A stretch of 64,000 nt of DNA, taken from positions 124,001-188,000 of the IMG/VR virus record IMGVR_UViG_3300032268_000832; one strand, given 5' to 3'. How positions within the stretch are numbered: position 1 is the first letter of the stretch; each line of letters opens with the position of its first letter. Below are positions 1-63,694 of this stretch, piece after piece. The position numbers were made by a program, and so were the translations under genes. The notes under the pieces were generated by a model. That model searched no databases and was not told the DNA's origin. It saw nothing but the letters and a program-made list of their open reading frames with translations.

Positions 1-35
1 TTGGTAGTTTAATATTTATATATAAAAGAAATATT

Positions 36-3000
36 ATGCCATTATTTTATGACACGGCTTCGCCAACACCAACTTCTAGAAATACAATCAATAGTGTTTC
101 AATTGATATTAGAGATTTTCTATTACAAAAAAATTTATTACCAACATATCCAACATTATCAACTAGTTTAAATGGTAGTCCACGTATTGGTCAACCAGTA
201 TTAGATACTGAAACTAATTTCCTTAATTTTTACCCTCAACAAAGACTTGAAGGTAATACATCAAGTTTAGACATACTAGGAAGCATTTTAAACGGTCAAG
301 GTGTTGGTTTGGGTGCTGGAGGTTCAATCGAACCTAATTTTGACGTTAGAGGGTCTCTATTAGGTCGTGTGTTAGGTTCTACAGGTATTTTAAGTGATAC
401 TAAGATAGGTACTATTGGTGCAAAGCAATTAGCGTTAGCTTTAGCTAATAATGCAGCGTTCAATGTTCAACAAGAAATATTAGGTACATTAAATGTAAGA
501 GAAAACATTTATTCACTTATCAAAGATGGAGATTTAGCTGGTTTCAGACCTAATTATAAAATCACGGTACCAAAATCTACAGGTGGTCAAATATTAAATG
601 GTATCACAAGAGTATTAGGGTTTCAAATACCAAGAAGTTATTTAGATGAAAGTGGTTCTATATTCCAAACAGAAAATGGTGATGCGGCAAATATAGTAAG
701 AGCTAATGCTATGATTGAAAACACTGGTAAGGGTCAAGTAGCTGCGTTAATTTCGTCTATGTTGAATAATTTAAGTGCTAATGAAGTTAATGGAAGTGTA
801 GAAATAAATCCTTTTAGAAGTGGTTATTCACCAGCATTCAATGATAAAAAAGGAGAACCGATGAGTGACCCTAAAATTTATGCTTATTATCTAACCAATG
901 GTCAAGGAACTGTTAATGGTGGTGTAAGTAAATTATTAGGTAATATAGGTGATTATATGCCTAGTCTTAGTTATCTTAGAGAACAAATGACTAGTGATTC
1001 TGGTTTTAAATCACCTGAAGAATTGTTTATTGGTACTGGTCAATTTTTTAATTCTGGATACGATAAAAGAACTATTAGTAGAATAGGATTTTCATGGGCT
1101 AGTGAACAACCAGATGCTGTTAACTCTTTAGCTGGTTTAGATAATACTTCAGATTTTGAATTTTTAACAGGTGTTGATACTAATAACATAAAAGGTGATA
1201 AAAAATCATTATTGGTTAAAACACAGAAATTATTCAATAGTAAAGGTATGAAAAACATTGTCACTGTTAAAGGTGATATGGAAAAAAATTCAACACAAAT
1301 ACAAACAGCTAATGGTAATGGTTTTTCTAAAGGTAGCGCTGTTTTAAAAGCAGAAATGTATGATTTAGAAAAAGGTATTTATATAGGTAAAGAAAATGCC
1401 ACAGCTGATGAAACATATTGTAGAAGTTGGACAACGTTAGACAGATATGATAGTGTAAGTAAATTGATTAGAAACAAGGCGTTATATACAGACCCAAATG
1501 TTGCGTATAGATTTCAAACACAAAACAGTGTGTTAGATGGTCCTTTTGTTAAAATAGCACCATACGCAAATGAAATTGAAGACCCTAAAAAATTCATGTT
1601 ATCAATTGAAAATCTTGCTTGGAAAGATGAAGTTCAAAATTTACCAGAATGTGAACAAGGTCCAGGTGATTTAATATCAGGTGAAAGAGGTAGAATTATG
1701 TGGTTCCCACCATATGATATCCAATTTAGTGAAAATAACACAGTCAATTGGGAAGAAACTAATTTCATTGGTAGAGGTGAACCTATATATACATATAATA
1801 ATACAAAAAGAAGTGGAAATTTATCTTTTAAAATAGTTGTTGACCACCCAAGTTATTATAATGCTTTTAATGCTAGAAAAAACCAAACAGGTTCACCTGA
1901 TGATAATTATATAGCATCATTTTTTGCTGGTTGTGTTGATGTTGATAGAAGATGGGCAGATAAATTAATGTCAACACAAACCGTTAATGAAATAATATCT
2001 AATAAAATAGAAACCCCTCAAAAAAGAGAAAGCCCTAAAAATCCAGATGCTCCTAAACCATGTAATGTTTATTTTCTTAATGACGTTAGGAAATATAATT
2101 CAGATTATGAAGATGGTTATTTATCTGGAACTACAACACCTATTAATTATGTTACAAACCCACAAGGTGAAGGACAAGGTGTAGGTTATTATAAAGCTGA
2201 TATTACACAAAAATTATATAATGGTATAACTAGGTCGTGGTTAGATAATAAAAACTTTGGGTTAAACGCTGGTAGAGACAGCGAATGTGAAACATCAGTT
2301 GTTAATGACTTTAAATACAATGGTTATAACGACCCTAATTGGCACACAGCTATGGTTGAGTTTTTAAAATCTTGTCCATGGGCTGTTGTTAATGTTACTG
2401 GATATGCTAGCCCACAAGGTTTTGAAGAATCTAATAAGAGATTAGCTGACCTTAGAGCGGATGGTATAATAGAAACGCTTAAAAGTACATGGGGTTCTCA
2501 ATTAGGTCTTAACAGTACCCAAATAGAACAGAGATTTAAAAAAATAGGTGCAAAAATACTTAAAGAAAACTCTTTTGGTGATAAAAAATGTGTTGTCCAA
2601 ACAAAATCAAACCCAAATCCACCAACAGATACTGAAGGATGTAAATTAGGTAGAAAAGTTGAAATTTCAATTGTTTTTGATGAGAATTTAAAAGCTGAAA
2701 TTGAAAAATCGTTAGCGCCTTTACCACCTAAAATAACTTATAGTAACACTAGACTAACAGGTGAGTTAAAAAATAAATTTTACACTGAGTGTGATTATTT
2801 TGAACGTTTAACTGAAAACGACCCTTTTGTTTTTGATAGTATTAGAGAAAAAATTAGATACTTTCACCCAGCGTTCCATTCAACCACACCAGAAGGTCTT
2901 AATTCTAGACTTACATTTTTATTACAATGTACTAGACAAGGACCGACATTAGAAAAACAAGGTGCAAATAATTTAGCGTTTGGTAGACCACCAGTTTGTA

Positions 3001-3941
3001 TTCTTAGAATTGGTGATTTTTATAACACAAAAATTGTTATTGATAATGTTAATATTAGTTATGAACCATTGGTATGGGACCTTAACCCAGAAGGTGTTGG
3101 TGTTCAACCTATGATTGCTAATGTTGATATAACGTTTAACTTTTTAGGAGGTTCAACTCTTATGGGTCCATTAAATAAATTACAAAATGCGTTATCGTTT
3201 AACTATTTTGCTAATACACATGTATATGACCCAAGAGCTGATTATATTTCTAGAGGTAAAGATGTATTTAAACAAGAATTTGTAGATGACGAAGAAGGTA
3301 ACCCAGTTTTAGTTGCAAAAAAAATACCTTCATATAATATAATAGATGGTGTGTCATATAAAGAATATACTGATATAACTAATAAACTAACGGAAACTGA
3401 TTTAGGAGTTACAGACCAACCATTAGACCAAATAAAAGATGAAGCTTTTGTTAATTCTGGTACAATAAATAATGAAACTGAAACACCTACAACTTCAAAT
3501 GTTGATGATAATCAAATTGTGAATAGTATAAAACTTGTAAATTATTTAAAATATACTACAACAGACGATATTTTAACGTTATTGTTAACGTATAATAAAG
3601 AATTTGATATACCTTTTAACCTTAAAGATGAAAACCCTAAAACGTATAAAGGACAAGTTTATTTAATAAATGGTATGTCTAAAATTAATATTGGTTTTGT
3701 TTCAGTTGTTTCTAATGGTTTAAATAATGGTGTTTTAGTAAGTACTAATAGTGGTGCTGAAATATCAATATCACCAAATATAAAAAATGACCAAACGTTT
3801 AACGTTATTTTAGTTTTTGATGATGAAACAATTTCAAACAACGTAAAAGATTTGTTTACTAAATCTGGAATCATGTTAAAACTTGAATGGGAAACTGGTG
3901 GGTCATCACAATGTAACTTTAATAACAACAATGGAATATAA
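36..3941 (+). CDS. Baseplate/tail-tube-initiator-like protein (T4 gp48/gp54 / CIS tube-like fold) with an inserted OmpA-like peptidoglycan-binding domain
   Basis: Tube-like motifs WFPPYDIQFSE..NWEETNFIGRGEPIYTYNNTKRSGNLSF and RPPVCILRIGDFYNTKIVIDNVNISYE..PMIANVDITF flank an OmpA-C-like segment (VYF...VNVTGYASPQG..SNKRLADLRA...GRKVEISI). Directly upstream of gp53-like and hub genes. Confidence 0.6.
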   Translation: MPLFYDTASPTPTSRNTINSVSIDIRDFLLQKNLLPTYPTLSTSLNGSPRIGQPVLDTETNFLNFYPQQRLEGNTSSLDILGSILNGQGVGLGAGGSIEPNFDVRGSLLGRVLGSTGILSDTKIGTIGAKQLALALANNAAFNVQQEILGTLNVRENIYSLIKDGDLAGFRPNYKITVPKSTGGQILNGITRVLGFQIPRSYLDESGSIFQTENGDAANIVRANAMIENTGKGQVAALISSMLNNLSANEVNGSVEINPFRSGYSPAFNDKKGEPMSDPKIYAYYLTNGQGTVNGGVSKLLGNIGDYMPSLSYLREQMTSDSGFKSPEELFIGTGQFFNSGYDKRTISRIGFSWASEQPDAVNSLAGLDNTSDFEFLTGVDTNNIKGDKKSLLVKTQKLFNSKGMKNIVTVKGDMEKNSTQIQTANGNGFSKGSAVLKAEMYDLEKGIYIGKENATADETYCRSWTTLDRYDSVSKLIRNKALYTDPNVAYRFQTQNSVLDGPFVKIAPYANEIEDPKKFMLSIENLAWKDEVQNLPECEQGPGDLISGERGRIMWFPPYDIQFSENNTVNWEETNFIGRGEPIYTYNNTKRSGNLSFKIVVDHPSYYNAFNARKNQTGSPDDNYIASFFAGCVDVDRRWADKLMSTQTVNEIISNKIETPQKRESPKNPDAPKPCNVYFLNDVRKYNSDYEDGYLSGTTTPINYVTNPQGEGQGVGYYKADITQKLYNGITRSWLDNKNFGLNAGRDSECETSVVNDFKYNGYNDPNWHTAMVEFLKSCPWAVVNVTGYASPQGFEESNKRLADLRADGIIETLKSTWGSQLGLNSTQIEQRFKKIGAKILKENSFGDKKCVVQTKSNPNPPTDTEGCKLGRKVEISIVFDENLKAEIEKSLAPLPPKITYSNTRLTGELKNKFYTECDYFERLTENDPFVFDSIREKIRYFHPAFHSTTPEGLNSRLTFLLQCTRQGPTLEKQGANNLAFGRPPVCILRIGDFYNTKIVIDNVNISYEPLVWDLNPEGVGVQPMIANVDITFNFLGGSTLMGPLNKLQNALSFNYFANTHVYDPRADYISRGKDVFKQEFVDDEEGNPVLVAKKIPSYNIIDGVSYKEYTDITNKLTETDLGVTDQPLDQIKDEAFVNSGTINNETETPTTSNVDDNQIVNSIKLVNYLKYTTTDDILTLLLTYNKEFDIPFNLKDENPKTYKGQVYLINGMSKINIGFVSVVSNGLNNGVLVSTNSGAEISISPNIKNDQTFNVILVFDDETISNNVKDLFTKSGIMLKLEWETGGSSQCNFNNNNGI

Positions 3942-3951
3942 AAAATAAATT

Positions 3952-4269
3952 ATGGCAGAATACTACGATAGATATAAATCATTTAGAAATAACTCTGGGG
4001 TTGAACCAATCCCAGGTATTACAATACCTTTTTCAAGTTCAGATAAATCGGTTGTTTATAAAAAAGGGGAAAGTAGACTTGACAAAATAAGTAATGTTTA
4101 TTATAATAACCCGTACAGTGGTTGGTTAATAATGCAAGCTAACCCAGAATTTGGTGGTTTAGAATTTAACATACCAGATGGTGCTGTTATTAGAGTACCA
4201 TTTCCTTTTAACGAAGCGATAAGTCGTTACTCAACCCAAGTTTTAAATTATAAACAATTATATGGATAA
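3952..4269 (+). CDS. Baseplate wedge gp53/LysM-like (tail X-like) protein
   Basis: YKKGESRLDKISNVYYNNPYSGWLIMQANP...IPDGAVIRVP matches the LysM-like gp53/gpX pattern; 105 aa, between the tube-like and hub genes. Confidence 0.7.
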   Translation: MAEYYDRYKSFRNNSGVEPIPGITIPFSSSDKSVVYKKGESRLDKISNVYYNNPYSGWLIMQANPEFGGLEFNIPDGAVIRVPFPFNEAISRYSTQVLNYKQLYG

Positions 4270-7200
4270 TCAACCTAAAATAGGGTGCCGTTTTGGTACT
4301 GGCACTGGAGATAGAACAAAAATTATAGACCCTAACGCGTTTTATGGTGAAACAAACTCATCTAGAAACATACCAGTTAGGACTGAAGATTTAACAATTT
4401 CAGTTAAATTAACAACAACAAAAAAATCTAGAACAACTATTGCTACTAGTGAAGATGAAAACACCGTTGTTAAAGAACAAAAAGGTGCTACTATAAATTT
4501 TATTGAAGGTTCTGATATTAATGGTAAAAAAGTGTTAACAACAAAGTACACTCAATTAACAACAGTATTTGACAAAGATGAGTTTAACCCAGAAACATTT
4601 GGTATTACTAATATTGATATAGATTATAATACTTCATACACACCAGTAATTAAAATTGATTTTGTTGATGTTAAAGGGTCTTCTATTTTTCAAAACGAAG
4701 AATCGTTAACACAAGATAATTCACAAAATAAATATACAACATTTTTTGAATTTCCTTATCCAATGTTTGAGTTGGAAGTAAAAGGTTATTATGGTCAACC
4801 AGTAACGTATTGTTTACATATGACTAAGTTTAACTCTAAATTTAATTCACAAACTGGTAATTTTGAAATTAGTTGTGAGTTTATTGGGTATACATATGCC
4901 TTATTATCAGACATGCTTGTTGGTGTTTTAAAAGTTATTCATTTAACAAATATTGGTGAGACTATATTTAATAATTACAACACAGAAAGAACAGACAAAG
5001 GTAAACAACCTATTTTAAATTTAGTTGAATTAAGAAAAAAAATAGCTGATATAAGTGAGGAAATACAAAAAGCTGCTGCAACTTCATCTGAATCAAAAGA
5101 TATAGTTTCGTTTCAAGAATCTAACAATTTATTATCTAGTTTAAATTTAAATTTAGCTAATTTAAACGACCAATTTTCTATAACAAAAAAAGATAATACA
5201 ACAGAAACGACTGAATATAGTTTTGTTGTTATGGATAATACACCTTTTTCTAATGAAAAAAATGCAAATTATAATGCGATAAATGCCGAGATAAAAGAAA
5301 CAATAAAAAAATATAACGATTTAAAAATTAATGGCTTATCAATAAATGAAAATGAATTTGCGTCACCAACAATTATAACTGAATTAACTTTAGATAAATT
5401 AGAACCAGACTATGATTTACAAATTGGTATTTATAAAGACGCCTCGGAAATAGAATCTTTTAAAAAGGATTTAAAAAATTATATAAAAAACAATTTTAAT
5501 TTAGCATCAAACGTAACATTTAGAGCGTTTGATTTAAGGTCTAGATATAAAATACTTGAAATTCAAAAATCTTTATCTGAAACTAGTTTAAAAGACGCTA
5601 ATAGAGCGTTAGCTATTCAGATAAAAGACAAGGTTGCTGTTACTTTAGGTTTTGAACCAACTGTTAGAAATATGGTTGAAATATTCACTAATTTAATTGA
5701 AGTTTTCATGGAAACTATATGGACAGTTTCAAATAAAGCTGAAAACAATGTCAAAAGAAAAGAATTATTACAAACAGCTTTTGGTCAAGATTTAAACAAA
5801 AGTGATTATACCGAAAAAATTAATTATTGGCCTTGGCCAGATTATAGAGAAAAAGATAGTAAAACAAACGCTTATGTTGATACGTATTTAGGTTCATGTC
5901 CTGAATTAAAAAATAATATATCAGACATAGACGAATTAGTTTTTATTGACGATTTATTAAAAGCGTTCCTAACAGCTAACAAACAACAAAAAGAATCAGA
6001 TTTATTAAATGCTGGTGATGAAACATTATTTATACCAACAAATCCTTTAGATACTAAGGTTTTTGGTGTTAGCGGTAATCCTTATGCTAAAAAAGATATA
6101 ATAAACACACAACAAGCTTTAAGAACTGTTTTGGTTAGAGCTATGACATTTTTAGGTTATTCCAATGACCAAGATTATTTAACTGCTGGTGAAGATGGTG
6201 AAATACAAACAATGGCTAAATTAGAAGCTAGAATGTTATATGATGCGTTATTAAATCCTACAGTAAAATCATTATTTAATAAAATAGAACAAGATAACAT
6301 AAAAAAAACAATTGGTAAGATTTCTGGTAGTGATAGATATGTGATTGGTGAGACAACGCGAGGTGATTATTATTACAACTATGTCAACAAAGAAGATGGT
6401 GGTTTATTAAATGATTTTAAATTATTACCTATTGGTTTTGATATTGAAGGTGAAGATTTAGAAACTGCTTATCAAAGTGAACCATTTGCTAGGACTTATA
6501 TTGAACAAGATAAATTAAGAGAATATGCTAGTTCTGGTAAAATATTTTTAACAAACTATGGTGGTGGTTTAAACGCTTTAGGTTCTGATTCTGTTGATAA
6601 CGCTAAATCTAATGATGGTGGTATTTATATAGAAATAAAACAACCATCAGATATAATCCCAACTACAACTGAAAGCTTATATGATACAAATTTAAAAACA
6701 GAAATGGTTTTAGATTTAAAAGCTTTAAAAGAAGATTCAATTGCTAGTGCAGGTTTTAATGTTTTTGGAGGTAATTATGGAATTTCAGATTATAGTAATA
6801 TTAATTTTGGTGAAGAGTTTAAAACGAGTCAACCAAAATCAATGTTTATTTTTTATGAACAAAATAGTATCCTAAATGGTTTAGGGTTATCTAGAAAAGC
6901 GTCTAAAAATTTAAAAAGTGATTATGATTTTAATAAAACGGGTAATATAAATTTATCTAATACATACGAAGAAAGAAATATAGATATACAAAGTATATTA
7001 GAAACAGGTAAATACAAAGGTAGCTACGCTAAACCTTTACATAAAGATTATGGTTCTAATTGGAGTTTATCTAGAAATATGGATAGTAGTGATGTAAGTT
7101 ATCCTTTTATAAGTCAATATTTAGATATTAGCGATGGTAGAAGAAAAACAATTTCTCTTTTTGGTAGTAAATTTTATTATTTTCAGAAAAATAATGTTAT

Positions 7201-10200
7201 TAATTTTTATGATAATAGACAATCATCGATTGCAGAAAAATATGTTAGAGGTTTATTGTTTTTAAACACATTACCGTTTAAAATATATGAAACTGGTAAC
7301 GTTGTCAATAACCCAAGTGGTACAGTAAAAAATAATAAAAACAATCCTTTTCAAGTACCTGAAATACGACATTTATTTGACATAAACGCTGGTTTTATAC
7401 ATACACCTAAATTATGGGTAGCCTATGTTGGTGGTTTATTGTGGTGGTTATCTGAAGAAGACCCAAAAGTTTCTGGAACTAAAATAATTGGTGGTGGTAG
7501 AGGTAAGACGGACCCTATTATTTGGAGAAAAGATTGTGGAAATGATTCAGGTAATTGGGCGTGTAAACCTACTAAAAATCAATATTTACCTAAAATGTTA
7601 ATGTTAGACCCTGAAGATATTGAAAGTGATAGTATACTACTTAATTTACCTAGACAAGTACAAGATAAATTTAAAGAAGTATTTTTTGAATTTATTAATG
7701 GTGAAGGTGAAACGTCATTTACTAACATAGCGTCTAAATTAGAAATTTACGATGGTACTGGGTTAGGATTTTGTAATTTAGTTAATAGATTTTCACAACC
7801 AGATTTACCAAATACTTTTATAAAAAAAACAAATGTTTCTAGTAATTACGTAAAAGGTAGTGACATAACAGATAATTTTAAAAATTATGATAATTATAAT
7901 GTTATTTTACCTGTTTATAGTGATATAGGTGGTGCAGAGTATTTAAGTTCAATATATTTGGAATTAAAAGATGATTCAGATATTGTAGGTAAATTAAAAG
8001 ACATTTTTAAAGAAGAATTAATAATTGTAAACACTGGTTATAAAATTTGGAATCCAAAAAAATATGCTCAATACAGACAAGGTGTTACAATAAAAAAAGA
8101 TGTTTATGGTGAATATTTTAAAACGTTTACAGAAGAAATAAAAGCTTTAACTGAAGGTACGACAATACAAGGTGAGGAAGAAAAACAACTAAATGAAGTT
8201 TTCGGTATGAGTAATAAAAACGACATTAAATTAATGTTGTATAAACACTGTAAAAACATTTATGATAAATGGGTTGGTGGTGTTCAAGATATTAACAACG
8301 TTATTTTCCAATGTGGTGATAATTCTAGAACTGATAGTAATAGAAAACAAACAGACACGGCTTTATCTGATAAATATGGTTCAGGCAAACCTAGATTAAT
8401 TGATAGTTTTAGATTTGTAACTAGGTCTTTTAGAGATATTGGTGACGAATTATTTATCGACCCTAGACCTGTTGAAGAGCAAATATCAGATTTTCCTAAC
8501 ACATCTAGTTATAGTGTAATTAGTGGTTTATTAAATGATAATAAATTTGAGTTTCACTCGTTACCAACTTTTATCAATTATAGAGATGATAAAATGTTAG
8601 AATCTGTTTTTACACCGCAAGAATATAATAATTCAATAACATCATGCGGTCCAACATTTGTTTGTGTTTATACAGGACAACATTCGAAAAGTTTAGATAT
8701 TAAATCTGGAAGATACCCAAATGATGGTTTTGATATGCGCTGTAATTCAACAACAATTCCAGACGATTTTAAAAACGCCTTACAACCATATGAGGACCCA
8801 GTTGCTGTTTTTGAGGTTAATTATTCGCAGCAAAATCAAAATATATTTAAAGACATAACTTTGGACCAAAGCGAATTTTCTGAAACTGAAGAATCTTTAA
8901 AGATTGTACAAGATATATCTATGAACGGGTTTGAAAATAAACCAACATATGCTGGTCAAAACATGTATAATATATATGGTGTTAGAAGTTATAGTGCTGA
9001 AATAGAAATGTTAGGGAATCCAATGATTCAACCTATGATGTATTTTCAATTAAATAACATACCAATGTTCCATGGTGCTTATATGATTATAAGAACTAGA
9101 CATAATATTAAACCTAATCACATGACAACATGGTTTACTGGTAGTAGGATTAGAGCTATTGAAACACCATTATTTGATGTTGCCGATGCGTATATGAGTT
9201 TAATCGAAACTTTAAACTTATCTGAAGTTAAGGGTGGTTCTACTACAGTTAGAGGAACTGGAGGTATGGTATTTGGTCAAAATTGTGGTGAGTTTAAATT
9301 AACTAAACCTATTGTAGATGGCGCTGAAGGTTTTTATAAAAGTAAACCAATTAGAGATTTAGTTGCAATTGTTGAAAGTAGAGGTGATTATAACGCTTAT
9401 AATAATGGTATTGCTGGTTCTAAAGGTACAGGAAACTATATACCATCACAAATGACCGTTTCTCAAATAAAATCAGCACAAGCAAAAACAGGTAACGATA
9501 GAATATTTGCAGTTGGTAAATATCAATTAATACCTAAAACTTTTGACACCATGGTAAAAACTTTAGGGTTTTCTGATAGTACAGTTTTCAATGCTGAAAA
9601 CCAAGAGAAAGCTGGTGAATGGTTAATATTAAAAGGAGCTGGTTATAGAAATGGTTTAATAAACTATTTCAAAACAGGTAGTTTGGGTAAAGAAAAAGAT
9701 TTACAAAACGCCATAACTGATTTAGCGTTAGAATTTGCATCTTTTCCATCTTATTATGGTGTAACTACTTCACAAGCGGCCTCTAGAGTTAACCCAATTG
9801 GTTATAATTCAAAAACAGCTTTATACGGTGGTTCAGCTGGAAATGCGGCGTCTGCTGTTTTTTGTGCATACGATGTTGCTGAAGCTTTAATTGAAACTTG
9901 GAAAAATTATAATCCTAATAAAACACCAGAATTTACTTTAGAAAAATTAAAAAATACGTCAACAATACAAACAGATAACGATAATTCTATAAAATTAACA
10001 GCGAATGATAAATCAACAGCTATTATTATGGGTGATTCAACTGTGGGTGTGATTAATTCTGTACCTAATGGTTTACAAAAAAATAAAATAGACATTTCTT
10101 TTAATAAAGTTGGTGAAACTGTTAATTGGTTAATCAGTAAATTGAAAGAATTTGGTAAAGATGGTAAAAAATATGGTAATACTAAATACGTTTTTGTGTC

Positions 10201-10530: not shown

Positions 10531-10538
10531 TATATTTG
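10531..10538 (+). promoter_or_regulatory. Bacteroidota-type -7 box (TATATTTG)
   Basis: TAGTATATTTGCA ending 4 nt before ATG 10543; matches TAnnTTTG. Confidence 0.55.
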
Positions 10539-11527: not shown

Positions 11528-11579
11528 TTAGTTTATGATATTTATAAGTAAACATAAGAGATTATAAACTATTTTTATT

Positions 11580-12615: not shown

Positions 12616-12745
12616 TTTGTTATATTGTTATTTTTTTAGTATATTTGTATATAAAAGAATTTAAAAATATAAAAAAACGTATAAAATAACGATAAAATTT
12701 TTAATTGTAAACACTTGACTTTTATTATTTTTGTTAGTATATTTG
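12616..12745 (+). promoter_or_regulatory. Tandem Bacteroidota-type promoters for the SSB/replication operon
   Basis: TTTG(12616-19)-N20-TATATTTG(12640-47) and TTGACT(12715-20)-N17-TATATTTG(12738-45). Confidence 0.7.
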
Positions 12746-16480: not shown

Positions 16481-16500
16481 TTATTCATACTACTTTACCA
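16470..16500. repeat. Perfect 12-bp inverted repeat upstream of the helicase
   Basis: TGGTAAAGTAGT-tattcat-ACTACTTTACCA, no U tract, abutting ATATTTAT at 16500. Confidence 0.7.
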
Positions 16501-16536
16501 TATTTATAATTACACAGTTTTAAAAACTATATATAA

Positions 16537-17985: not shown

Positions 17986-17987
17986 AC

Positions 17988-18941: not shown

Positions 18942-18954
18942 TTAATAATAAAAT

Positions 18955-21159: not shown

Positions 21160-21218
21160 ATTTCACATATTTACTAATAAAAATAGTTTATTATAATATT
21201 TATGAAATAAAGAACATT

Positions 21219-36084: not shown

Positions 36085-36121
36085 TAATTAAATTAAATAT
36101 ATTTATAATAAAAAGAAAAAA

Positions 36122-39793: not shown

Positions 39794-40094
39794 AACAATA
39801 ATAAAAGGTAGAGAAAGATTAAATAGAGGTAAACTTAATAGTTTTGCTGAATTACCTATTGATAAACAAGAAATTTTTAAAAAAATAAAAGAAAGTTTAA
39901 AAAAATATTTAACTACTGAAGTTTTTGTTTTTGGTAGTTATAATCATGGTTATTGGGATGAAGAATCTGATTATGACGTTATTGTATTTAATGAAATACA
40001 CACCGACATTAGAGATAAAATTAGAGAAGAAGTTGGTGTTAAAGTGGATGTAATGTTTGGTAAAAATAACATAGGATATATTCCAATACCATAA
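39786..40094 (+). CDS. Minimal nucleotidyltransferase (Pol-beta superfamily, MNT-like)
   Basis: VFVFGSYNHGYWDEESDYDVIV = hG[S]x8-10DxD signature, plus third acidic strand KVDVM; 102 aa. Confidence 0.8.
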   Translation: MNKTIIKGRERLNRGKLNSFAELPIDKQEIFKKIKESLKKYLTTEVFVFGSYNHGYWDEESDYDVIVFNEIHTDIRDKIREEVGVKVDVMFGKNNIGYIPIP

Positions 40095-40105
40095 TATTTA
40101 TTAGT

Positions 40106-41883: not shown

Positions 41884-41940
41884 TATTCTTTACAATTGCA
41901 TATTTATAATTAAAATAAAGATAAAAGACAAAACAAAATT

Positions 41941-46010: not shown

Positions 46011-46042
46011 ATTGTAAATATAATTTTTTATTAGTATATTTG
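46011..46042 (+). promoter_or_regulatory. Bacteroidota-type promoter for primase
   Basis: ATTG(46011-14)-N20-TATATTTG(46035-42); ATG 4 nt downstream. Confidence 0.65.
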
Positions 46043-46988: not shown

Positions 46989-47020
46989 TTTGCATTTGGT
47001 ATAAAAATTTAGTATATTTG
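46989..47020 (+). promoter_or_regulatory. Bacteroidota-type promoter
   Basis: TTTG(46989-92)-N20-TATATTTG(47013-20). Confidence 0.7.
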
Positions 47021-51881: not shown

Positions 51882-51912
51882 TTGTAAATTAAAGAAAAAA
51901 ATCATATCTTTG
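51882..51912 (+). promoter_or_regulatory. Bacteroidota-type promoter
   Basis: TTG(51882-84)-N20-TATCTTTG(51905-12). Confidence 0.6.
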
Positions 51913-52438: not shown

Positions 52439-52479
52439 ATGATAAAACCCTTGACTTTTAAGGGTTTTATCATTATAAT
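52439..52479 (+). promoter_or_regulatory. Sigma-gene promoter embedded in a perfect 14-bp inverted repeat
   Basis: ATGATAAAACCCTT-gactttt-AAGGGTTTTATCAT (52439-52473) containing TTGACT(52451-56)-N17-TATAAT(52474-79). Confidence 0.6.
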
Positions 52480-52520: not shown

Positions 52521-53342
52521 ATGAGTAAAAAATTTTTAAACTACAATGCAGATGATACCATATCAAAATATTTTAAAGAAATAAAAAAATCAACTGTGTT
52601 AACTCCAGACAAAGAAGTTGAGTTAGCAATAAGAATAAAAAAAGGTGACCAGTTAGCGATAGATGAATTAGTTAATGCAAATTTAAAATTTGTTATTTCA
52701 ATTGCCAAAGATTATCAAGGTCAAGGTTTAACGTTATCTGATTTAATAAGTGAGGGTAATTACGGATTAATTAAAGCTGCAACTAGATTTGACCATACAA
52801 GAGGTTTTAAATTTATATCTTATGCTGTTTGGTGGGTTAAACAATCAATAATTCAAAGTTTAAATGATAACGCTAGAGTTGTAAGATTACCAGCAAATGT
52901 TATCAATAAAATTTCAAAACTAAATAAAGAGTTTGGTAATGGTGAGGATAATGAAGATGAATTAATGCGTGAAATGTCTAGTTTTGATGAGTCGTTATTA
53001 AATTACCCTAAAACATCATCTCTTAATCAAAATGTAAATGAAGACGGTGGTGAGATAATCGATTTAATTATTGGTGATGAGTTAGAAAATAAATTAGAAG
53101 ATGTTGAAATATCAGACATAGTTAAAATAGAATTGAACAACATACTATCTATTTTAGATGAAAGAGAAAGAATGATAATTGAATCTTATTTTGGTATTAA
53201 TAACGAACATGATGGTATGACACTTGAAGCTATCGGTGACAAATATGATTTAACGAAAGAAAGAATCAGACAAATCAAAGAAAAAGCAATAAGAAAATTA
53301 AGACATAACACAAAAAAGTTACAAAGTCTTATTAATTTATAA
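52521..53342 (+). CDS. Phage-encoded RNA polymerase sigma-70 factor (RpoD-like, lacking region 1.1)
   Basis: ANLKFVISIAKDY..DLISEGNYGLIKAATRFDHTRGFKFISYAVWWVKQSI, RVVRLP, MTLEAIG..LTKERIRQIKEKAIRKLR. Confidence 0.95.
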   Translation: MSKKFLNYNADDTISKYFKEIKKSTVLTPDKEVELAIRIKKGDQLAIDELVNANLKFVISIAKDYQGQGLTLSDLISEGNYGLIKAATRFDHTRGFKFISYAVWWVKQSIIQSLNDNARVVRLPANVINKISKLNKEFGNGEDNEDELMREMSSFDESLLNYPKTSSLNQNVNEDGGEIIDLIIGDELENKLEDVEISDIVKIELNNILSILDERERMIIESYFGINNEHDGMTLEAIGDKYDLTKERIRQIKEKAIRKLRHNTKKLQSLINL

Positions 53343-53372
53343 CAAATAAGTTTAAATCTATATTTATTAAAT

Positions 53373-54785
53373 ATGAAGTTCAAACTTAAATATGTCATGT
53401 TAGGTCTAGCTCTCGCTGTTGCTGGTTGCGCAGCATACTTTTCAGTATGGGGTCTTAGCCAACTATTTGCAGGTGCTAGCGTGTCTGTTATTATAATGGC
53501 GTCAGTATTAGAATTAGGTAAATTAGTAACAACAACAGCCTTACACACTTATTGGAACAAGTTAGCCAAAACACTTAGAATTTATTTAGCGATAAGTGTT
53601 GTTATATTAATGGTTATCACATCCGCTGGTATCTATGGGTTTCTTTCAAACGCTTACCAATCAACAGCAAATAAGTTAGAAATCCATGAAGGTGAGTTAG
53701 GTGTTTTAGATGCTAAAAAAGCAACCTTTGAAAAAAGTGTAGTTGATAATCAAAAATTAATAGACACTAAAACAAAGCGTTTAGACCAACTATCTAACTT
53801 AAGAAGTAGTCAAGAATCTAGATTAGATAATTCTGGTTCTAATAGAGCTAAAAATAGCGTTAGAGGTGATATTAAGTCTGCTGATAGTGAAATACAAAAA
53901 TTAAACACTGAAATAGATGTGTTAAATGCTAAAAACATTGTACTTTCAGATTCTATAAACGCATACAATGTTAAAGCAATTGAATTGAAATCTGGTAGTT
54001 CAGTCGCTGCTGAAGTTGGTCCTTTAAAATACATTGCCCAATTAACTGGTATCTCTATGGCTAGTGTTGTTAATTATTTGATATTACTTTTAATTTTTGT
54101 TTTTGACCCATTAGCAGTTGCTTTGGTTCTTATTACAAACAAAGTTTTTCAAATTGAAAAAGAAGAAGAAGATGAAACTAAAAAAATATTAGAAGATATA
54201 GTTGAAGTGTTAAATAATGAAGATGAAAAAAATGTTGAAGTACAAAATGAACCAAATTATAATAAATTCGAATATAAATCACCTGGAGTATCTACTAGAG
54301 AGCATGATAACGATGTTTTAGAAGAACCAATCGAATTTTCAGATGATGAAACAATTGAACAACCAATTTTTGAGAATATAATAGACCCAGTTGATGAACT
54401 TATCATAGATGGAGAATCTGGAGAAATTAAATTCCCAGAAAAACCTTTAGAAATAAATCAAGAAGTGTTCTTACCATCACCACAAGAAAAAGAAGAAGAT
54501 GAGGAAGAATATGATGAATCACATGCGTTAGATATGGTTATGAACCACATTTTAGGTGATTATGAAGAAGTGGTTGAAGTTGAAAATGAAGTTGCTAAAG
54601 TAGAAGAAGAAGTTGCTGTAGTTGAAGAAGAGATTTTACCAATTGAAGAAGAAAATTTAAACGCTAAAGGTAAGATAACCTTAGAAGAAATTAAAGAAGT
54701 TAAAGAAAGAAATAGAGGTTTTTCGGTAAACATTCCAGAACCAAAAAGAAATAATTTAATTCAAAGAATAACTGGGAAACGTTAA
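53373..54785 (+). CDS. Multi-pass membrane protein with coiled coil and acidic tail
   Basis: Three N-terminal hydrophobic helices, coiled coil, EVGPLKYIA..LLIFVFDPLAVALVL, E-rich C-terminus. Confidence 0.65.
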   Translation: MKFKLKYVMLGLALAVAGCAAYFSVWGLSQLFAGASVSVIIMASVLELGKLVTTTALHTYWNKLAKTLRIYLAISVVILMVITSAGIYGFLSNAYQSTANKLEIHEGELGVLDAKKATFEKSVVDNQKLIDTKTKRLDQLSNLRSSQESRLDNSGSNRAKNSVRGDIKSADSEIQKLNTEIDVLNAKNIVLSDSINAYNVKAIELKSGSSVAAEVGPLKYIAQLTGISMASVVNYLILLLIFVFDPLAVALVLITNKVFQIEKEEEDETKKILEDIVEVLNNEDEKNVEVQNEPNYNKFEYKSPGVSTREHDNDVLEEPIEFSDDETIEQPIFENIIDPVDELIIDGESGEIKFPEKPLEINQEVFLPSPQEKEEDEEEYDESHALDMVMNHILGDYEEVVEVENEVAKVEEEVAVVEEEILPIEEENLNAKGKITLEEIKEVKERNRGFSVNIPEPKRNNLIQRITGKR

Positions 54786-56613: not shown

Positions 56614-56647
56614 ATTTATTGTAAATATTTATTAATAAAATATAACT

Positions 56648-58230: not shown

Positions 58231-58287
58231 AGTATGATATCACAGTTTTTATATAAAACTGTGATATTTATTATAAAATACATTGAA

Positions 58288-60003
58288 ATGGATAAAAATA
58301 ACATTAAAAAACAATTAGTTAAAAGATTTGTAAACGAAGCTACTCCTGGTATTGATGTAACAAAAGCTATTTTAACTAAATCTAAAGCGTTTAATGATGA
58401 AGGTTTAAAAGACATCGAGAAAAATCTTAAAGCTGCTGATAAAGGTCAAAAGAAATCTGCTTCTAAAACCAAGGACATGGCGCAAAACAAATTCAACTAC
58501 AATTCTGATTTTGAGAAAGAGTATCACCAAGAAATGGAGATAATGAATGGTCCAGAAATGAATGAATATGATAGAGACCCAGACAAAATGTTCAAAGAAA
58601 GAGCAAAAAGAGCAATAGAAGGTCACCCAACTATGGGTAATAGTCCAGACTATGCTAATGTTGTTCCAGAACAACAAGGGTTTACAGGACCAACTTTTGG
58701 TAAAAAATTGGTTCAAGCTATTAAAGACTCAAATAAAAAGAGAGAAGACGCTGTTAAGGGTATTATTAGTTTTGGTGACGACATTGAAACAGTACCAGAT
58801 AATTATGCACCAATGGCTAAATTTTCATCTTTGTCTGAGAGTGAAGACAAAACAAAAATGGATGACCCAGATGATATGTCACAATCAGACGCTTCTGGTG
58901 ATGACTACGAAAAAGCTAGCAGAGAAATCGCTATGAAAGATAAAACTAACAATAAATCACAAATAAAAGAAGGAATGAAAAGATTAAAATTCAAACAAGA
59001 ATTCAAAGGTGTTGGAAACGCTTTGAAGCTTATCCCTGAATCATATAGAGTTGATAACAAAGTATTTGAAATGACTGACGGTGTTGAGTCATATAGAATG
59101 CGTTGGGAGGGAACACTTACTGAAGGTAAAGCGATTGTGCTTATGGCTTCTGACAAAACCTTGGTTAACGAGGATATGCAAAAAATGAAACACCTTATGG
59201 GGTATAAATCTCAAGATACTCTTGGAACAGTTAAAGGTAAATCTAGAATTGATGAAAATGTTATTTTCTCTGATATCTGGAAAAAATCTGTAGTTCTTAT
59301 TGAAGGTGAAGATATTGAATCACAAAAAGCTCCAGAGAAAAAAACTGACGAAAAAGTTGCTCAAGCTGGTGAAGCTAAAAAACATGTTAAGGGTTCAGAA
59401 ACCACTGACAAAGGCACAAAAGCACCTGCTGCTAAAACTGGTTCAGCTGATTCATTAGAAAAAGTTAAAAAACAAGCACCAGACGCTAAAAAACACGTAC
59501 AAGGTAGTGTTGAGAAAAAAGTAGGATTAGGTCTTGGTGACCAATCTGAAGGTGAAGGTGAATGGGACCAAATAGATGTACCACAAGCAGCTGCTCATGG
59601 TAATCCATCAAAAACTACATATGCTGCAAAACCAGCTACAGGTGAATGGGATAAAGCTAAACCAGCTCACGCGGCAGACGCTAAAAAACATGTTCACATG
59701 AAAGAAGGTATCCAATTAGGTGAAAGTTATTTCGCACCAATGGATGAAGCATGGATGGAAGAAATGATGAATGGTGGTATGGGTGAAAACTACATGGGTG
59801 AAGAAGAAGAATACGTTGATTACACAATGGGTAGAGACGATGAAGACCAATTACCAAACCCTCCAAGAGAACTTAATATCCCTATGGATGAAGAAATGGA
59901 TTCTTTATATGAATTTGAAGAAGAAGAAAAAGACATGGATGAAATGGATTCATTGATGGAAGGTGAAGAAGAAGACGAAGAAGACTACGAAGACGAAGAA
60001 TAA
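58288..60003 (+). CDS. Large charged protein with internal repeats and acidic tail; candidate head-internal/scaffold protein
   Basis: Start moved from 58234 to ATG 58288 because ATATTTAT lies at 58264; AKKHV x3, GEWD x2, poly-E tail. Confidence 0.6.
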   Translation: MDKNNIKKQLVKRFVNEATPGIDVTKAILTKSKAFNDEGLKDIEKNLKAADKGQKKSASKTKDMAQNKFNYNSDFEKEYHQEMEIMNGPEMNEYDRDPDKMFKERAKRAIEGHPTMGNSPDYANVVPEQQGFTGPTFGKKLVQAIKDSNKKREDAVKGIISFGDDIETVPDNYAPMAKFSSLSESEDKTKMDDPDDMSQSDASGDDYEKASREIAMKDKTNNKSQIKEGMKRLKFKQEFKGVGNALKLIPESYRVDNKVFEMTDGVESYRMRWEGTLTEGKAIVLMASDKTLVNEDMQKMKHLMGYKSQDTLGTVKGKSRIDENVIFSDIWKKSVVLIEGEDIESQKAPEKKTDEKVAQAGEAKKHVKGSETTDKGTKAPAAKTGSADSLEKVKKQAPDAKKHVQGSVEKKVGLGLGDQSEGEGEWDQIDVPQAAAHGNPSKTTYAAKPATGEWDKAKPAHAADAKKHVHMKEGIQLGESYFAPMDEAWMEEMMNGGMGENYMGEEEEYVDYTMGRDDEDQLPNPPRELNIPMDEEMDSLYEFEEEEKDMDEMDSLMEGEEEDEEDYEDEE

Positions 60004-60043: not shown

Positions 60044-60079
60044 GTTTTACAAAATATTTATATAAAAACAATATATATT

Positions 60080-62958: not shown

Positions 62959-62967
62959 AATTTTTAT

Positions 62968-62998
62968 TAAATATAAACATAATATATAAATTAGTCAA
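62968..62998 (-). promoter_or_regulatory. Promoter for the minus-strand membrane gene
   Basis: On the - strand TTGACT(62998-93)-N17-TATATTTA(62975-68); back-to-back with + strand ATATTTAT at 62998. Confidence 0.55.
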
Positions 62999-63018
62999 TA
63001 TTTATAATAAAAAAAAAC

Positions 63019-63192
63019 ATGAAGAATTTTATAAAAAAATTACTTAGAGAAACCATAGATAGAATCATAAAATGTAAAAAATGTGGTTGGTCTTGGAAAG
63101 AATCTGAATCTTCAAAAGAAGATTTGTATGTTTGTCATAAATGTGGGTTTGATAATGAATCAAATTATATTGACAAAAACAAAAATAACTAG
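63019..63192 (+). CDS. Small Zn-ribbon protein; not in ORF track
   Basis: Manual translation MKNFIKKLLRETIDRIIKCKKCGWSWKESESSKEDLYVCHKCGFDNESNYIDKNKNN*; two CxxC pairs; ATATTTAT upstream. Confidence 0.7.
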   Translation: MKNFIKKLLRETIDRIIKCKKCGWSWKESESSKEDLYVCHKCGFDNESNYIDKNKNN

Positions 63193-63200: not shown

Positions 63201-63212
63201 ATAAAAAAAAAT

Positions 63213-63428
63213 ATGGACGATAAAATAATAAGTAGAGAACAGTCGTTGGCTGATAAAGATGTGTTGGTTGAAAAATATAAAACAGCACTTAAAAAAACAC
63301 AATTTATAAACGAAGTTAAAAACGGCCTTGGTGATGAGATTAAAAAGAACCCAAAACCTAAAGTGATTAAAAAAAGCTTCACATCAAAAATAATATCAGC
63401 AATAAAAAAAGTGTTTACTAAATTTTAA
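63213..63428 (+). CDS. Hypothetical basic protein
   Basis: 71-aa ORF. Confidence 0.55.
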   Translation: MDDKIISREQSLADKDVLVEKYKTALKKTQFINEVKNGLGDEIKKNPKPKVIKKSFTSKIISAIKKVFTKF

Positions 63429-63429
63429 T

Positions 63430-63663
63430 ATGAACTTTGATAAATTAATTGAAACAGTTTCCGAAATATTCGAAAATGAGAAAATAGAAAAAAATGGTCT
63501 GGTGCTAACCTACCAATTACATCCAAAAGCCCACTTGTCGATGAACTTAGAATTACTACAAAAAACACAAGGTGTTAATACCAATTTTGAACCAGTTGAT
63601 GAATTTGAAGTTGAAATTAGTGGTATTTTAATAAAATTTGTTAAAAAAAATTACGAAGAATAA
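63430..63663 (+). CDS. Hypothetical protein
   Basis: 77-aa ORF. Confidence 0.55.
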   Translation: MNFDKLIETVSEIFENEKIEKNGLVLTYQLHPKAHLSMNLELLQKTQGVNTNFEPVDEFEVEISGILIKFVKKNYEE

Positions 63664-63694
63664 AAAAAAGTAGTATATTTGCCAAAAATAATTA

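What the first reader, a model, noticed from the sequence alone, without database searches (positions are those of the whole stretch)
12..63681. Two-class promoter code: host-type TAnnTTTG vs candidate late ATATTTATW, alongside a host-like phage sigma-70
Seen: TATATTTG/TATCTTTG at 10531, 12640, 12738, 46035, 47013, 51905 and 63674, five of them with TTG exactly 20 nt upstream, mostly before DNA-metabolism genes (SSB, primase, nuclease, RNase HII). A different 8-mer, ATATTTAT, sits 4-34 nt upstream of starts at 12, 11538, 16500, 21196, 36099, 40094, 41900, 53360, 56625, 58264, 60054 and 62998. These genes are mostly baseplate, tail, head-internal and lysis genes; DnaB is the exception. Known: TAnnTTTG with an upstream TTTG is the Bacteroidota primary-sigma promoter. 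Inference: the late box is the host -7 element with its terminal G changed to A and no evident -33 requirement. The phage sigma (52521), which resembles the Bacteroidota housekeeping sigma with substitutions around regions 2.4/3.0 (WWVKQSIIQSLNDNARVVRLPAN), may have been retuned to read it. That would be a minimal early-to-late switch unlike T4 gp55. Note TATTTATA is also the reverse complement of the T4 late box TATAAATA.
Basis: partly seen in the sequence, partly recalled or inferred. Interest (0 to 1): 0.72.

Follow-up and report, generated by a model that had tools for sequence, protein, structure and literature searches.

The report
Two promoter classes in jumbo phage
This freshwater giant phage really does mark its genes with two different promoter signals, but the "late" signal ATATTTAT is an old feature of the whole phage lineage.

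Summary
All 12 ATATTTAT and 7 TAT(A/C)TTTG sites exist. Eleven of 20 plus-strand ATATTTAT copies lie in the 3.2% of the window that is intergenic (0.9 expected).

Across the 306-kb phage genome there are two classes. Class I is TTG-N19-21-TAT(A/C)TTTG, the Bacteroidota sigma-A type. Class II is ATATTTAT(A/T)(A/T)nTAAA with no -33 TTG, 56 sense to 4 antisense, usually 10-19 nt before the ATG.

Lake metatranscriptome contigs of the scaffold/major-capsid operon begin 12-16 nt after one class II box, with no RNA upstream.

The proposed reader is not supported. The window's sigma (s1) has DNA-contact helices almost identical to a Bacteroidota sigma-A, which fits class I. The genome holds two more sigmas outside the window: s2 (RpoD-like) and s3 (a divergent gp55-family late sigma).

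Flavobacterium phage immuto and Microcystis phage Mel-JY01 have an s3 homologue and no RpoD-like sigma. Both still carry ATATTTAT, and in immuto it precedes the structural genes. A relative without s2 keeps both classes.

Best reading: a T4-like early/late switch with a new late consensus read by s3. I rate it a new variant of a known kind. The s3 assignment is inferred, not shown.

The parts
12..19 (+). Class II (late-type) box ATATTTAT, 16 nt before the ATG at 36 (1301-aa ORF, no family hit)
10531..10538 (+). Class I -7 element TATATTTG before the ORF at 10543; no TTG at spacer 20
11538..11545 (+). Class II box, 34 nt before the ATG at 11580
12617..12647 (+). Class I promoter TTG-N20-TATATTTG, the distal one of a tandem pair before the SSB gene
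12715..12745 (+). Class I promoter TTGAC..-N20-TATATTTG, proximal, before the SSB gene (12791-13687)
16500..16507 (+). Class II box, 29 nt before the DnaB-like helicase gene (16537), which is followed by RNR small and large subunits. This is a replication operon under the late-type box.
21196..21203 (+). Class II box, 15 nt before the gp25-like baseplate wedge gene (21219), followed by a gp6-like wedge gene
36099..36106 (+). Class II box, 15 nt before the 1223-aa ORF at 36122
40094..40101 (+). Class II box only 4 nt before the ATG at 40106 (ATATTTATtagtATG). This implies a leaderless or near-leaderless mRNA.
41900..41907 (+). Class II box, 33 nt before the 715-aa ORF at 41941
46012..46042 (+). 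Class I promoter TTG-N20-TATATTTG before the DNA primase gene (46047)
46990..47020 (+). Class I promoter TTG-N20-TATATTTG before the exonuclease gene (47037), followed by SbcD/SbcC-like genes
51882..51912 (+). Class I promoter TTG-N20-TATCTTTG before the 169-aa ORF at 51929, the gene upstream of s1
52451..52479 (+). s1's own upstream signal: a terminator-like hairpin whose stem holds TTGACT, then N17-TATAAT. In relatives the same place reads TTGAC-N19-TATATTT(G/A/AT).
52521..53342 (+). s1: phage RpoD-like sigma, 273 aa, with regions 1.2, 2 and 4. It is 50% identical to a Bacteroidota chromosomal sigma, and its DNA-contact helices are nearly the same as that sigma's.
53360..53367 (+). Class II box, 5 nt before the ATG of a predicted lipoprotein gene (53373). 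The box is kept in relatives while the flanks diverge; the gap to the ATG ranges from 4 to 17 nt.
56625..56632 (+). Class II box after a terminator hairpin, 15 nt before the ATG at 56648
58264..58271 (+). Class II box after a hairpin, 16 nt before the in-frame ATG at 58288, the likely true start of the 58234-60003 ORF
60054..60061 (+). Class II box after a terminator, 18 nt before the endolysin gene (60080)
62998..63005 (+). Class II box, 13 nt before a 57-aa ORF at 63019
63674..63681 (+). Class I -7 element TATATTTG before the ORF at 63695; no TTG at spacer 20

Best explanation
The window is part of a 306-kb freshwater jumbo phage with a T4-type (gp23) capsid, probably infecting a Bacteroidota host. 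It uses two promoter classes.

Class I is TTG-N19-21-TAT(A/C)TTTG(C/T)A with an A-rich upstream tract. This is the Bacteroidota sigma-A promoter. It drives the early region (genome 0-20 kb), the tRNA/small-gene region (180-306 kb) and replication genes. It is read by host sigma-A and probably also by the phage's own sigma-A-like s1 (window 52521-53342), whose DNA-contact helices match the host type.

Class II is a -10-like element without a -33 element: (non-T)ATATTTAT(A/T)(A/T)nTAAA, often with a T-rich tract 13-17 nt upstream. Transcription starts a few nucleotides downstream, giving very short or absent leaders in this host. It drives structural, lysis and some other genes.

Class II is most likely read by host core RNA polymerase carrying s3 (genome 66040-66768, minus strand, outside the window). 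s3 is a highly conserved, divergent two-domain sigma of the T4 gp55 'late sigma' family.

Shown: both motif classes, their geometry, strand bias and conservation across relatives; an RNA 5' boundary just downstream of one class II box; the sigma fold of s3.

For: Motifs:
- Enrichment, distance peak and orientation.
- The genome map separates the classes: class I dominates 0-20 kb and 180-306 kb, class II dominates 20-200 kb.
- Footprint: ATATTTAT is retained downstream of the s1 orthologue while flanks diverge.

RNA:
- Contigs from two runs of one lake metatranscriptome start at genome 54360 and 54364, 12-16 nt after the box at 54341-54348. One carries the Illumina read-2 adapter at that end.
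- Depth is about 0 upstream and 13-24 downstream, running through the scaffold and gp23-type capsid genes.

s1 is host-like in regions 2.4 and 4.2.

s3:
- 24 of 61 family members hit Pfam Sigma70_r2, and 14 of 61 hit PHROG 234 'late sigma transcription factor'.
- hhalign against T4 gp55 gives 59% probability, E 9e-5, collinear from the N-terminus.
- The AF2 model has pLDDT 91. The top 50 VIA-align PDB matches are all sigma factors. Residues 14-117 fit sigma domain 2 at 2.6-3.2 A.
- s3 is the best conserved of the three sigmas: 88/80/55/54/52% identity in five relatives, against 72/67/56/53/48% for s1.

Phyletic test:
- Flavobacterium phage immuto has an s3 homologue and no Sigma70_r2/r4 or s1/s2 match. 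ATATTTAT is 19 sense to 1 antisense (2.4 expected) and precedes terminase, sheath, tube, hub and fibre genes.
- Microcystis phage Mel-JY01 has an s3 homologue and no r2 hit. The count is 19 to 3 (4.1 expected), with longer Shine-Dalgarno-containing leaders.
- Relative G005 lacks s2 and still has 56 to 6 (6.3 expected).
Against: - No binding or transcription assay links s3 to the box; the link is phyletic and by exclusion.
- Every genome examined that has the box also has s3, but no s3-free relative was tested as a negative control.
- The RNA evidence is one promoter outside the window, from assembled contigs rather than 5'-end mapping. A processing site is not excluded.
- Timing is inferred from gene function only, and a DnaB-RNR operon sits behind a class II box.
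- s3 seems to keep a sigma-4-like C-terminal domain, yet no conserved -35-like sequence was found beyond a weak T tract, which is absent in immuto.
- No gp33 or T4-type clamp homologue was detected.
- The role of s2 is unexplained, and no third motif class was found.
- Twelve spacers carry both classes, and 9 of 42 TATATTTA sites have a -33 TTG, so the classes overlap.
Confidence: 0.6

Rival explanations
1. One reading: the window's RpoD-like sigma (s1) has been retuned in regions 2.4/3.0 to read ATATTTAT, giving a one-base (G to A) early-to-late switch.
For: s1 is phage-encoded, conserved in 325 related viral contigs, and sits directly upstream of a class II box. It differs from the Bacteroidota sigma at some region 3.0 positions: NDNARVV and PANVIN against AEQSRIV and PLNRVG.
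Against: - The region 2.3/2.4 recognition helix and the region 4.2 helix are nearly identical to the Bacteroidota sigma, which predicts TTG/TAnnTTTG reading and a need for a -33 element.
- Phages immuto and Mel-JY01 have the box but no RpoD-like sigma.
- G/A/AT endings are interchangeable at the TTGAC-bearing s1 promoter of relatives.
- Immuto early promoters end in TTTAGG.
Confidence: 0.07
2. The second RpoD-like sigma (s2, genome 287999-288871), whose region 2.4 is strongly altered, reads the late box.
For: In s2, region 2.4 reads FAVWWVRKLMMEYVSNYGKTVRIPAN and the end of region 4.2 is changed. Its gene has a class I promoter (TATATTTG, 25 nt upstream), as expected for a factor made early.
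Against: The 96%-complete relative G005 has only one RpoD-like sigma (the s1 orthologue) but 87 upstream ATATTTAT copies. Immuto and Mel-JY01 lack s2 yet have the box.
Confidence: 0.05
3. ATATTTAT is a true promoter, but it is read by host sigma-A holoenzyme helped by a non-sigma phage activator or by RNAP modification, or by another phage factor not recognised here. s3 would then have another role.
For: The box shares ATATTT with the host -7 element. Hybrids with a -33 TTG exist (9 of 42 TATATTTA sites). Immuto early promoters tolerate TTTA in the -7 element. s3 was assigned only by phyletic pattern.
Against: The same box is used in a cyanobacterial phage whose host sigma-A reads a different -10 (my own knowledge of cyanobacterial promoters; box shown). 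s3 is a sigma by fold and family, is the most conserved of the three sigmas, and is the only sigma-like protein shared by all box-bearing genomes examined.
Confidence: 0.18
4. ATATTTAT is not a promoter but an RNA-level signal (a processing site or translation enhancer) at a fixed distance before start codons.
For: In this genome the box lies mostly 10-19 nt before the ATG. An RNA 5' boundary from contigs cannot tell a primary end from a processed one.
Against: - The distance to the ATG ranges from 4 to about 60 nt, and from 4 to 17 nt for one orthologous gene.
- In Mel-JY01 the box lies further upstream, with a Shine-Dalgarno sequence in between.
- There is no RNA upstream of the capsid-operon box, although a gene lies directly upstream.
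- About one box in seven (11 of 82) follows a strict terminator hairpin; more follow looser ones.
Confidence: 0.05

Closest known systems
T4 late transcription: late promoter TATAAATA read by gp55, with gp33 and the gp45 clamp
   Same: Both have an AT-only, -10-type box with no -35 element, placed before structural and lysis genes. Both have a small phage sigma related to region 2 of sigma-70. The s3 family hits PHROG 234 'late sigma transcription factor', and hhalign against gp55 gives 59% probability. Capsid (gp23), baseplate (gp25/gp6), UvsX, gp32-like and gp46/47-like genes show distant T4 kinship.
   Different: The consensus is ATATTTAT(A), not TATAAATA, which occurs only 6 times in the sense orientation. 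s3 is 242 aa, and its C-terminal half superposes on sigma domain 4 of ECF-type sigmas, a domain gp55 lacks. No gp33 or T4-type clamp was found. Two extra RpoD-like sigmas are present.
Bacteroidota primary-sigma promoter (-33 TTTG / -7 TAnnTTTG; B. fragilis and F. johnsoniae work, recalled from my own knowledge)
   Same: Class I sites match it: TTG-N19-21-TAT(A/C)TTTG in 67 of 80 sites. s1 is 50% identical to a Bacteroidota chromosomal sigma and lacks a region 1.1, as those sigmas do.
   Different: These are phage promoters, partly in near-identical repeated promoter-plus-leader modules. The phage brings its own sigma-A-like proteins.
Group 2 jumbo phages of Iyer et al. 2021 (PMC7824862): gp23-type capsid, no phage RNAP, a 'minimal' sigma plus an RpoD-like sigma plus gp33
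   Same: The inventory matches: gp23 capsid, RpoD-like sigmas and a small divergent sigma. Bacteroidota hosts are listed in their subgroup 2.2.
   Different: In the passages of that paper I retrieved by term search, no promoter motifs are given. A gp33 orthologue was not found here.
Bacillus phage SPO1 sigma cascade (host sigma-A, then gp28, then gp33/34)
   Same: Several phage sigmas redirect host core RNAP from early to later promoter classes (background in the abstract of PMC13401047, and my own knowledge).
   Different: Only two motif classes could be found for three phage sigmas, and two of the phage sigmas are close to the housekeeping type.

Membership tests
Bacteroidota sigma-A-type promoter (class I sites) | -7 element TAnnTTTG | tested here: met
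   TAT(A/C)TTTG occurs 75 times in oriented upstream spacers against about 5 expected, and 68 sense to 4 antisense.
Bacteroidota sigma-A-type promoter (class I sites) | -33 TTG(TTTG) about 19-21 bp upstream of the -7 element | tested here: met
   67 of 80 sites have it. Other offsets give 5-9%. Five of 7 window sites have spacer 20.
Bacteroidota sigma-A-type promoter (class I sites) | Transcription starts about 7 nt downstream and depends on sigma-A | not testable with these tools
   No 5'-end data were obtained for a class I site. The RNA piece over genome 52900-53330 ran off the laid stretch.
Bacteroidota sigma-A-type promoter (class II sites, ATATTTAT) | T at the first position, G at the last position, and a -33 TTG | tested here: not met
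   The first position is not T-biased and is G/C-enriched in relatives. The last position is A. The -33 TTG is present in 3 of 75 sites.
T4-type late transcription system | gp55-family late sigma encoded by the phage | tested here: met
   For s3: hhalign against T4 gp55 gives 59% probability, E 9e-5. Fourteen of 61 family members hit PHROG 234. The fold is that of a sigma. The sequence signal is weak; the PDB profile hit to gp55 has E 0.16.
T4-type late transcription system | -10-only late promoter with consensus TATAAATA | tested here: not met
   It is -10-only in kind, but the consensus is ATATTTAT(A). TATAAATA occurs only 6 times in the sense orientation.
T4-type late transcription system | gp33 co-activator | tested here: inconclusive
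   phmmer and tblastn with T4 gp33 (residues 11-112) found nothing below E 0.19. gp33 is small and fast-evolving.
T4-type late transcription system | gp45-type sliding clamp coupling late transcription to replication | tested here: inconclusive
   Pfam DNA_PPF (PF02916) has no six-frame match. The record is estimated to be 86% complete, and only one clamp family was searched.
Group 1/2 (RpoD-like) sigma-70 (s1) | Regions 1.2, 2, 3 and 4 | tested here: met
   Pfam finds r1.2, r2 and r4 above their cut-offs. The alignment to SigA structures is full-length (E 1e-53). The region 3 Pfam model was not hit.
Retuned promoter specificity of s1 | Changed DNA-contact residues in region 2.4 or 4.2 relative to the host sigma | tested here: not met
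   Only conservative changes were found: I/V, R/K, L/I and A/S in region 2.4; R/K, V/I and R/K in region 4.2.

The most novel reading that the evidence does not exclude
s3 may be a missing link in the gp55 family: a late sigma that still carries a sigma-4-like domain. It could therefore work without gp33 and without the sliding clamp, uncoupling late transcription from replication. It would read a promoter (ATATTTAT) conserved across phages of two bacterial phyla, Bacteroidota and Cyanobacteria. Meanwhile the phage's two housekeeping-like sigmas (s1, s2) would replace host sigma-A at class I promoters, so the host sigma could be shut off. That would make a three-sigma takeover by a phage with no RNA polymerase of its own.
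Probability: 0.25. Interest if true: 0.75.

Novelty: new variant of a known kind. Interest (0 to 1): 0.55.

Why it matters
It gives a usable promoter grammar for a very large, almost wholly uncultured clade of freshwater jumbo phages. The s1 family appears in 325 viral contigs, and the s3 family has 1,229 clusters at 50% identity.

The late box ATATTTAT, with its strand and distance rules, can be used in three ways:
- to call operons and true start codons;
- to sort genes of unknown function into early and late sets;
- to recognise members of the lineage.

Two cultured relatives, Flavobacterium phage immuto and Microcystis phage Mel-JY01, make the proposed sigma-promoter pair directly testable.

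If s3 is a gp55 relative that kept a sigma-4 domain, it bears on how the minimal T4 late sigma evolved. It also bears on whether late transcription in these phages needs replication.

Tried and rejected
1. Whole-window counts with dinucleotide shuffles show no excess. They are rejected as a test because the signal lies in position and strand.
2. First k-mer pass: the top words were tRNA T-loops. The 38 tRNAs were masked.
3. A third (middle) promoter class was sought in the 56 spacers without either motif. Nothing recurrent was found.
4. E. coli-type TTGAC-N17-TATAAT: the copy before s1 is the only intergenic one, so it is not a class.
5. The genome-contig scan with s1 gave no named Bacteroidota RpoD directly. 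One was reached through the Sporocytophaga genome.
6. The 109-aa ORF at genome 31957-32286 was considered as a gp33-like or sigma-4-like factor. It is conserved in immuto and G005, but nothing ties it to transcription, so it was dropped.
7. Idea that 7-deazaguanine DNA modification (as in immuto) silences G-containing class I promoters: there is no TGT/DpdA match in this genome, so it was dropped.
8. Foldseek alone gave only weak E-values for s3 (0.14 and above), although the hits were sigma factors. VIA-align was needed.
9. The T tract 13-17 nt upstream of the box as a pure terminator by-product: only 11 of 82 boxes follow a strict hairpin, so it is not only that. It is weak or absent in immuto, so its role stays open.
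10. Literature searches found no prior description of this late box or of transcription in these phages. The library is limited, so this is not proof of absence.

Full report
WHAT THE WINDOW IS. The window is bases 124001-188000 of a single 306,463-bp viral contig with 31% G+C. CheckV estimates 86% completeness. The contig has 38 tRNA genes and a gp23-type major capsid gene at genome 55681-57510. Near-identical DNA occurs mainly in lake-water metagenomes, with some from freshwater, aquatic and wastewater samples.

PHROG scans of the window found these genes:
- SSB, UvsX-like recombinase and an exonuclease;
- DnaB-like helicase and RNR small and large subunits;
- gp25- and gp6-like baseplate wedge proteins;
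- a RuvC-like protein, a primase, a second exonuclease and SbcD/SbcC-like proteins;
- an endolysin and many large ORFs with no family.

The gene order SSB-recombinase-exonuclease-DnaB-RNR is shared with Flavobacterium phage vB_FspM_immuto (160 kb). By the scheme of Iyer et al. 2021 (PMC7824862), this is a 'group 2' jumbo phage: gp23 capsid, no phage RNA polymerase, phage sigma factors.

THE OBSERVATION. Whole-window counts are not above shuffles (27 against 20.7, and 126 against 124.6). The signal is positional.
- Eleven of 20 + strand ATATTTAT copies fall in the 3.2% of the window that is intergenic, where 0.93 are expected.
- Genome-wide, 82 of 133 copies are intergenic, in 7.65% of the genome.
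- 71 lie on the sense side upstream of a gene, against 10 expected.
- The 3' end of the box lies 10-19 nt before the start codon in 39 of 62 cases, and 0-4 nt before it in 9.
- In spacers between co-directional genes the box is 56 sense to 4 antisense. TAT(A/C)TTTG is 68 to 4.

TWO CLASSES, DEFINED BY MORE THAN ONE BASE. Among intergenic ATATTT/ATCTTT cores:
- TAT(A/C)TTTG has a TTG at spacer 19-21 in 67 of 80 cases.
- (non-T)ATATTTA has it in 3 of 75 cases, which is the background rate.
- TATATTTA has it in 9 of 42 cases; these are hybrids.

Class II has further features:
- no T preference at the position of the host element's first T, which is G/C-enriched in relatives;
- A/T at the next two positions, then nTAAA;
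- a T-rich tract 13-17 nt upstream.

Only 11 of 82 boxes follow a strict terminator hairpin, so the T tract is not merely a terminator tail.

Class I dominates genome 0-20 kb and 180-306 kb. The first stretch is an early region with about 15 near-identical promoter-plus-leader repeats. The second holds tRNAs and small genes. Class II dominates 20-200 kb, which holds structural and lysis genes. Of 228 upstream spacers, 73 have class I only, 64 class II only, 12 both and 79 neither. No third motif emerged from the spacers without either motif.

IS CLASS II A PROMOTER? The best direct evidence comes from RNA. The scaffold/capsid operon starts at genome 54409, behind a box at 54341-54348. In two runs from one lake metatranscriptome, a contig of about 2.55 kb begins at genome 54360 (X17) or 54364 (X15).
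- In X17 the Illumina read-2 adapter is fused to that end, and read-1 adapter sequence lies at the 3' ends. That is the arrangement I expect for a sense transcript in a dUTP-stranded library (my own knowledge of the library design).
- Word depth is 0.02-0.33 in the 200 nt upstream and 13-24 downstream, through to the capsid stop codon. It is 0 in the flanking genes.

This is a sharp RNA 5' boundary 12-16 nt after the box. Standard libraries lose a few 5' nucleotides. Boxes that lie only 4-5 nt before a conserved ATG (window 40094 and 53360, with orthologues) require a start no more than about 5-6 nt after the box. I therefore place the start about 5-8 nt downstream, which is inference.

There are limits. 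This is one promoter outside the window, from contigs rather than 5'-end mapping, so a processing site is not excluded.

Phylogenetic footprinting supports constraint. Downstream of the s1 orthologue in relatives, ATATTTAT is retained while the hairpin, spacer and leader all diverge.

WHO READS IT? The genome encodes three sigma-like proteins.

- It has regions 1.2, 2 and 4.
- It is 50% identical to a 291-aa chromosomal sigma of a Sporocytophaga genome (Bacteroidota), against 37-39% to other SigA/RpoD genes carried in phage-collection records.
- Its recognition segments are FISYAVWWVKQSIIQSL and LTKERIRQIKEKAIRKLRH. The Bacteroidota protein has FISYAVWWIRQSILQAL and LTRERVRQIKEKAIRRLRH.
- These residues are 90% or more conserved across 120 s1 orthologues.

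A sigma with host-type 2.4 and 4.2 helices is expected to read TTG/TAnnTTTG, not a box without a -33 element.

s2 (genome 287999-288871) is 40% identical to s1. Its region 2.4 is strongly changed. A class I promoter lies 25 nt upstream of its start.

s3 (genome 66040-66768, minus strand, 242 aa) is only a marginal Sigma70_r2 hit by itself, at 21.5 bits. As a family, however:
- 24 of 61 members hit Sigma70_r2, and 14 of 61 hit PHROG 234 'late sigma transcription factor'.
- A profile aligns collinearly with T4 gp55: 59% probability, E 9e-5, columns 10-122 against 7-124.
- The AF2 model (pLDDT 91) gives sigma factors as all 50 top VIA-align matches. Residues 14-117 fit sigma domain 2 at 2.6-3.2 A. 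Full-length superpositions on two-domain ECF sigmas place the C-terminal half on domain 4.

The s3 family is large, with 1,229 clusters at 50% identity. It is better conserved among relatives than s1 or s2.

THE PHYLETIC TEST.
- Flavobacterium phage immuto has an s3 homologue (gp118, 35% identity). It has no match to s1 or s2 and no six-frame Sigma70_r2 or r4 hit. ATATTTAT is nevertheless 19 sense to 1 antisense in its spacers (2.4 expected). It directly precedes the terminase, tail sheath, tail tube, baseplate hub, tail fibre/spike and virion-protein genes.
- Immuto's early cluster (60.9-76.2 kb) uses about 20 copies of GTTGC-N19-TATATTTAGGTA. That is a -33 element with a -7 element containing TTTA, so TTTA is compatible with the -33-dependent class.
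- Microcystis phage Mel-JY01 has capsid 43% identical, s3 homologue 28% identical, and no r2 hit. ATATTTAT is 19 to 3 (4.1 expected). It often follows terminators and is followed by longer leaders containing a Shine-Dalgarno sequence. This argues against a translational role and against derivation from the Bacteroidota -7 element.
- Two complete jumbo relatives show both classes: G004 at 49 to 6, and G005 at 56 to 6. G005 lacks s2.

The box therefore goes with s3, not with s1 or s2. No s3-free relative was examined, so this is co-occurrence, not proof.

THE s1 PROMOTER ITSELF IS INFORMATIVE. In relatives the s1 gene is preceded by a conserved TTGAC, about 19 nt, then TATATTTG, TATATTTA or ATATTTAT, depending on the phage. 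In this genome it reads TTGACT-N17-TATAAT, the only intergenic E. coli-like promoter in the genome. The terminal G/A is thus interchangeable when a -33 element is present.

s3 lies deep in a tightly packed minus-strand operon. A class I promoter lies 12 kb upstream and a class II box 4 kb upstream. This is compatible with early expression followed by self-reinforcement, but that is inference. In immuto the s3 homologue ends the last early-promoter operon.

COMPARISON WITH KNOWN SYSTEMS. It works like T4: host-type early promoters, then an AT-only -10-type late box read by a gp55-family sigma.

It differs in several ways:
- the consensus is ATATTTAT(A), with TATAAATA occurring only 6 times in the sense orientation;
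- s3 has an apparent sigma-4-like domain;
- no gp33 or T4 clamp was detected (inconclusive);
- there are two additional housekeeping-like sigmas whose division of labour is unknown.

My literature searches found no description of this box or of transcription in these phages.

VERDICT. The best model is a T4-like late switch with a new consensus read by s3 (confidence 0.6). I rate it a new variant of a known kind, with interest 0.55.

Noticed in passing
genome 199106-199179 and 239866-239941 (outside the window): ARAGORN calls two suppressor-like tRNAs, with anticodons CTA (reads TAG) and TCA (reads TGA), among 38 tRNAs. It also calls two odd tRNAs with 4-base anticodon calls. ORFs in the window are long and intact under table 11, and coding density is 92%, so no recoding is evident.
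   Followed up: partly
genome 1-12,700 (outside the window): About 15 near-identical copies of a promoter-plus-leader module, TTTGGTAnnTTAAAATAATTGTTATATCTTTGCACTCACAAACCAATTAAATT, lie before small ORFs. This looks like an early-gene region with a conserved 5' leader.
   Followed up: partly
genome 287999-288871 (s2) and 66040-66768 minus strand (s3), outside the window: Two further sigma genes. s2 is RpoD-like with a rewritten region 2.4, and no promoter class could be assigned to it. s3 is the gp55-family late sigma.
   Followed up: yes
window 52451-52479: A perfect E. coli-type TTGACT-N17-TATAAT overlaps a terminator-like hairpin just before the s1 gene. It is the only intergenic one in the genome. 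Relatives have TTGAC-N19-TATATTT(G/A) at the same place.
   Followed up: yes
genome 208805-208842, 195157-195175, 239535-239599, 250993-251055: Tandem class I then class II promoters lie before the same genes in the tRNA-rich region. Part of a repeated module, AAAAAGTTGCAAAAAAACTTGACTTGTATTAAAACAGTTCGTATCTTTGCA, is involved. Twelve spacers carry both classes.
   Followed up: partly
window 58234-60003: The longest-ORF start at 58234 is probably wrong. A hairpin and a class II box lie inside it, and an in-frame ATG follows at 58288.
   Followed up: partly
window 16500-21111: The DnaB-like helicase and both RNR subunits sit behind a class II box rather than a class I promoter. So class II is not purely 'structural'.
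   Followed up: no
window 4262-10513: A 2083-aa ORF has a lysozyme/endolysin-like domain at residues 1695-1844 and sits next to a baseplate-wedge-like gene. It is probably a tail-associated lysin or tape-measure-type protein.
   Followed up: no
NC_055915.1 (phage immuto) 60,958-76,218: About 20 copies of an early promoter, GTTGC-N19-TATATTTAGGTATCAATAATTAAAAC, lie before small ORFs. There is no TAnnTTTG at all in immuto's upstream spacers, although the host is a Flavobacterium.
   Followed up: partly
genome 57685 minus strand (L120 about 4770-4800): A class I promoter on the minus strand points into the spacer after the capsid gene, towards a small uncalled ORF (ATGGAAAATAAAG...). It faces the capsid terminator.
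   Followed up: no
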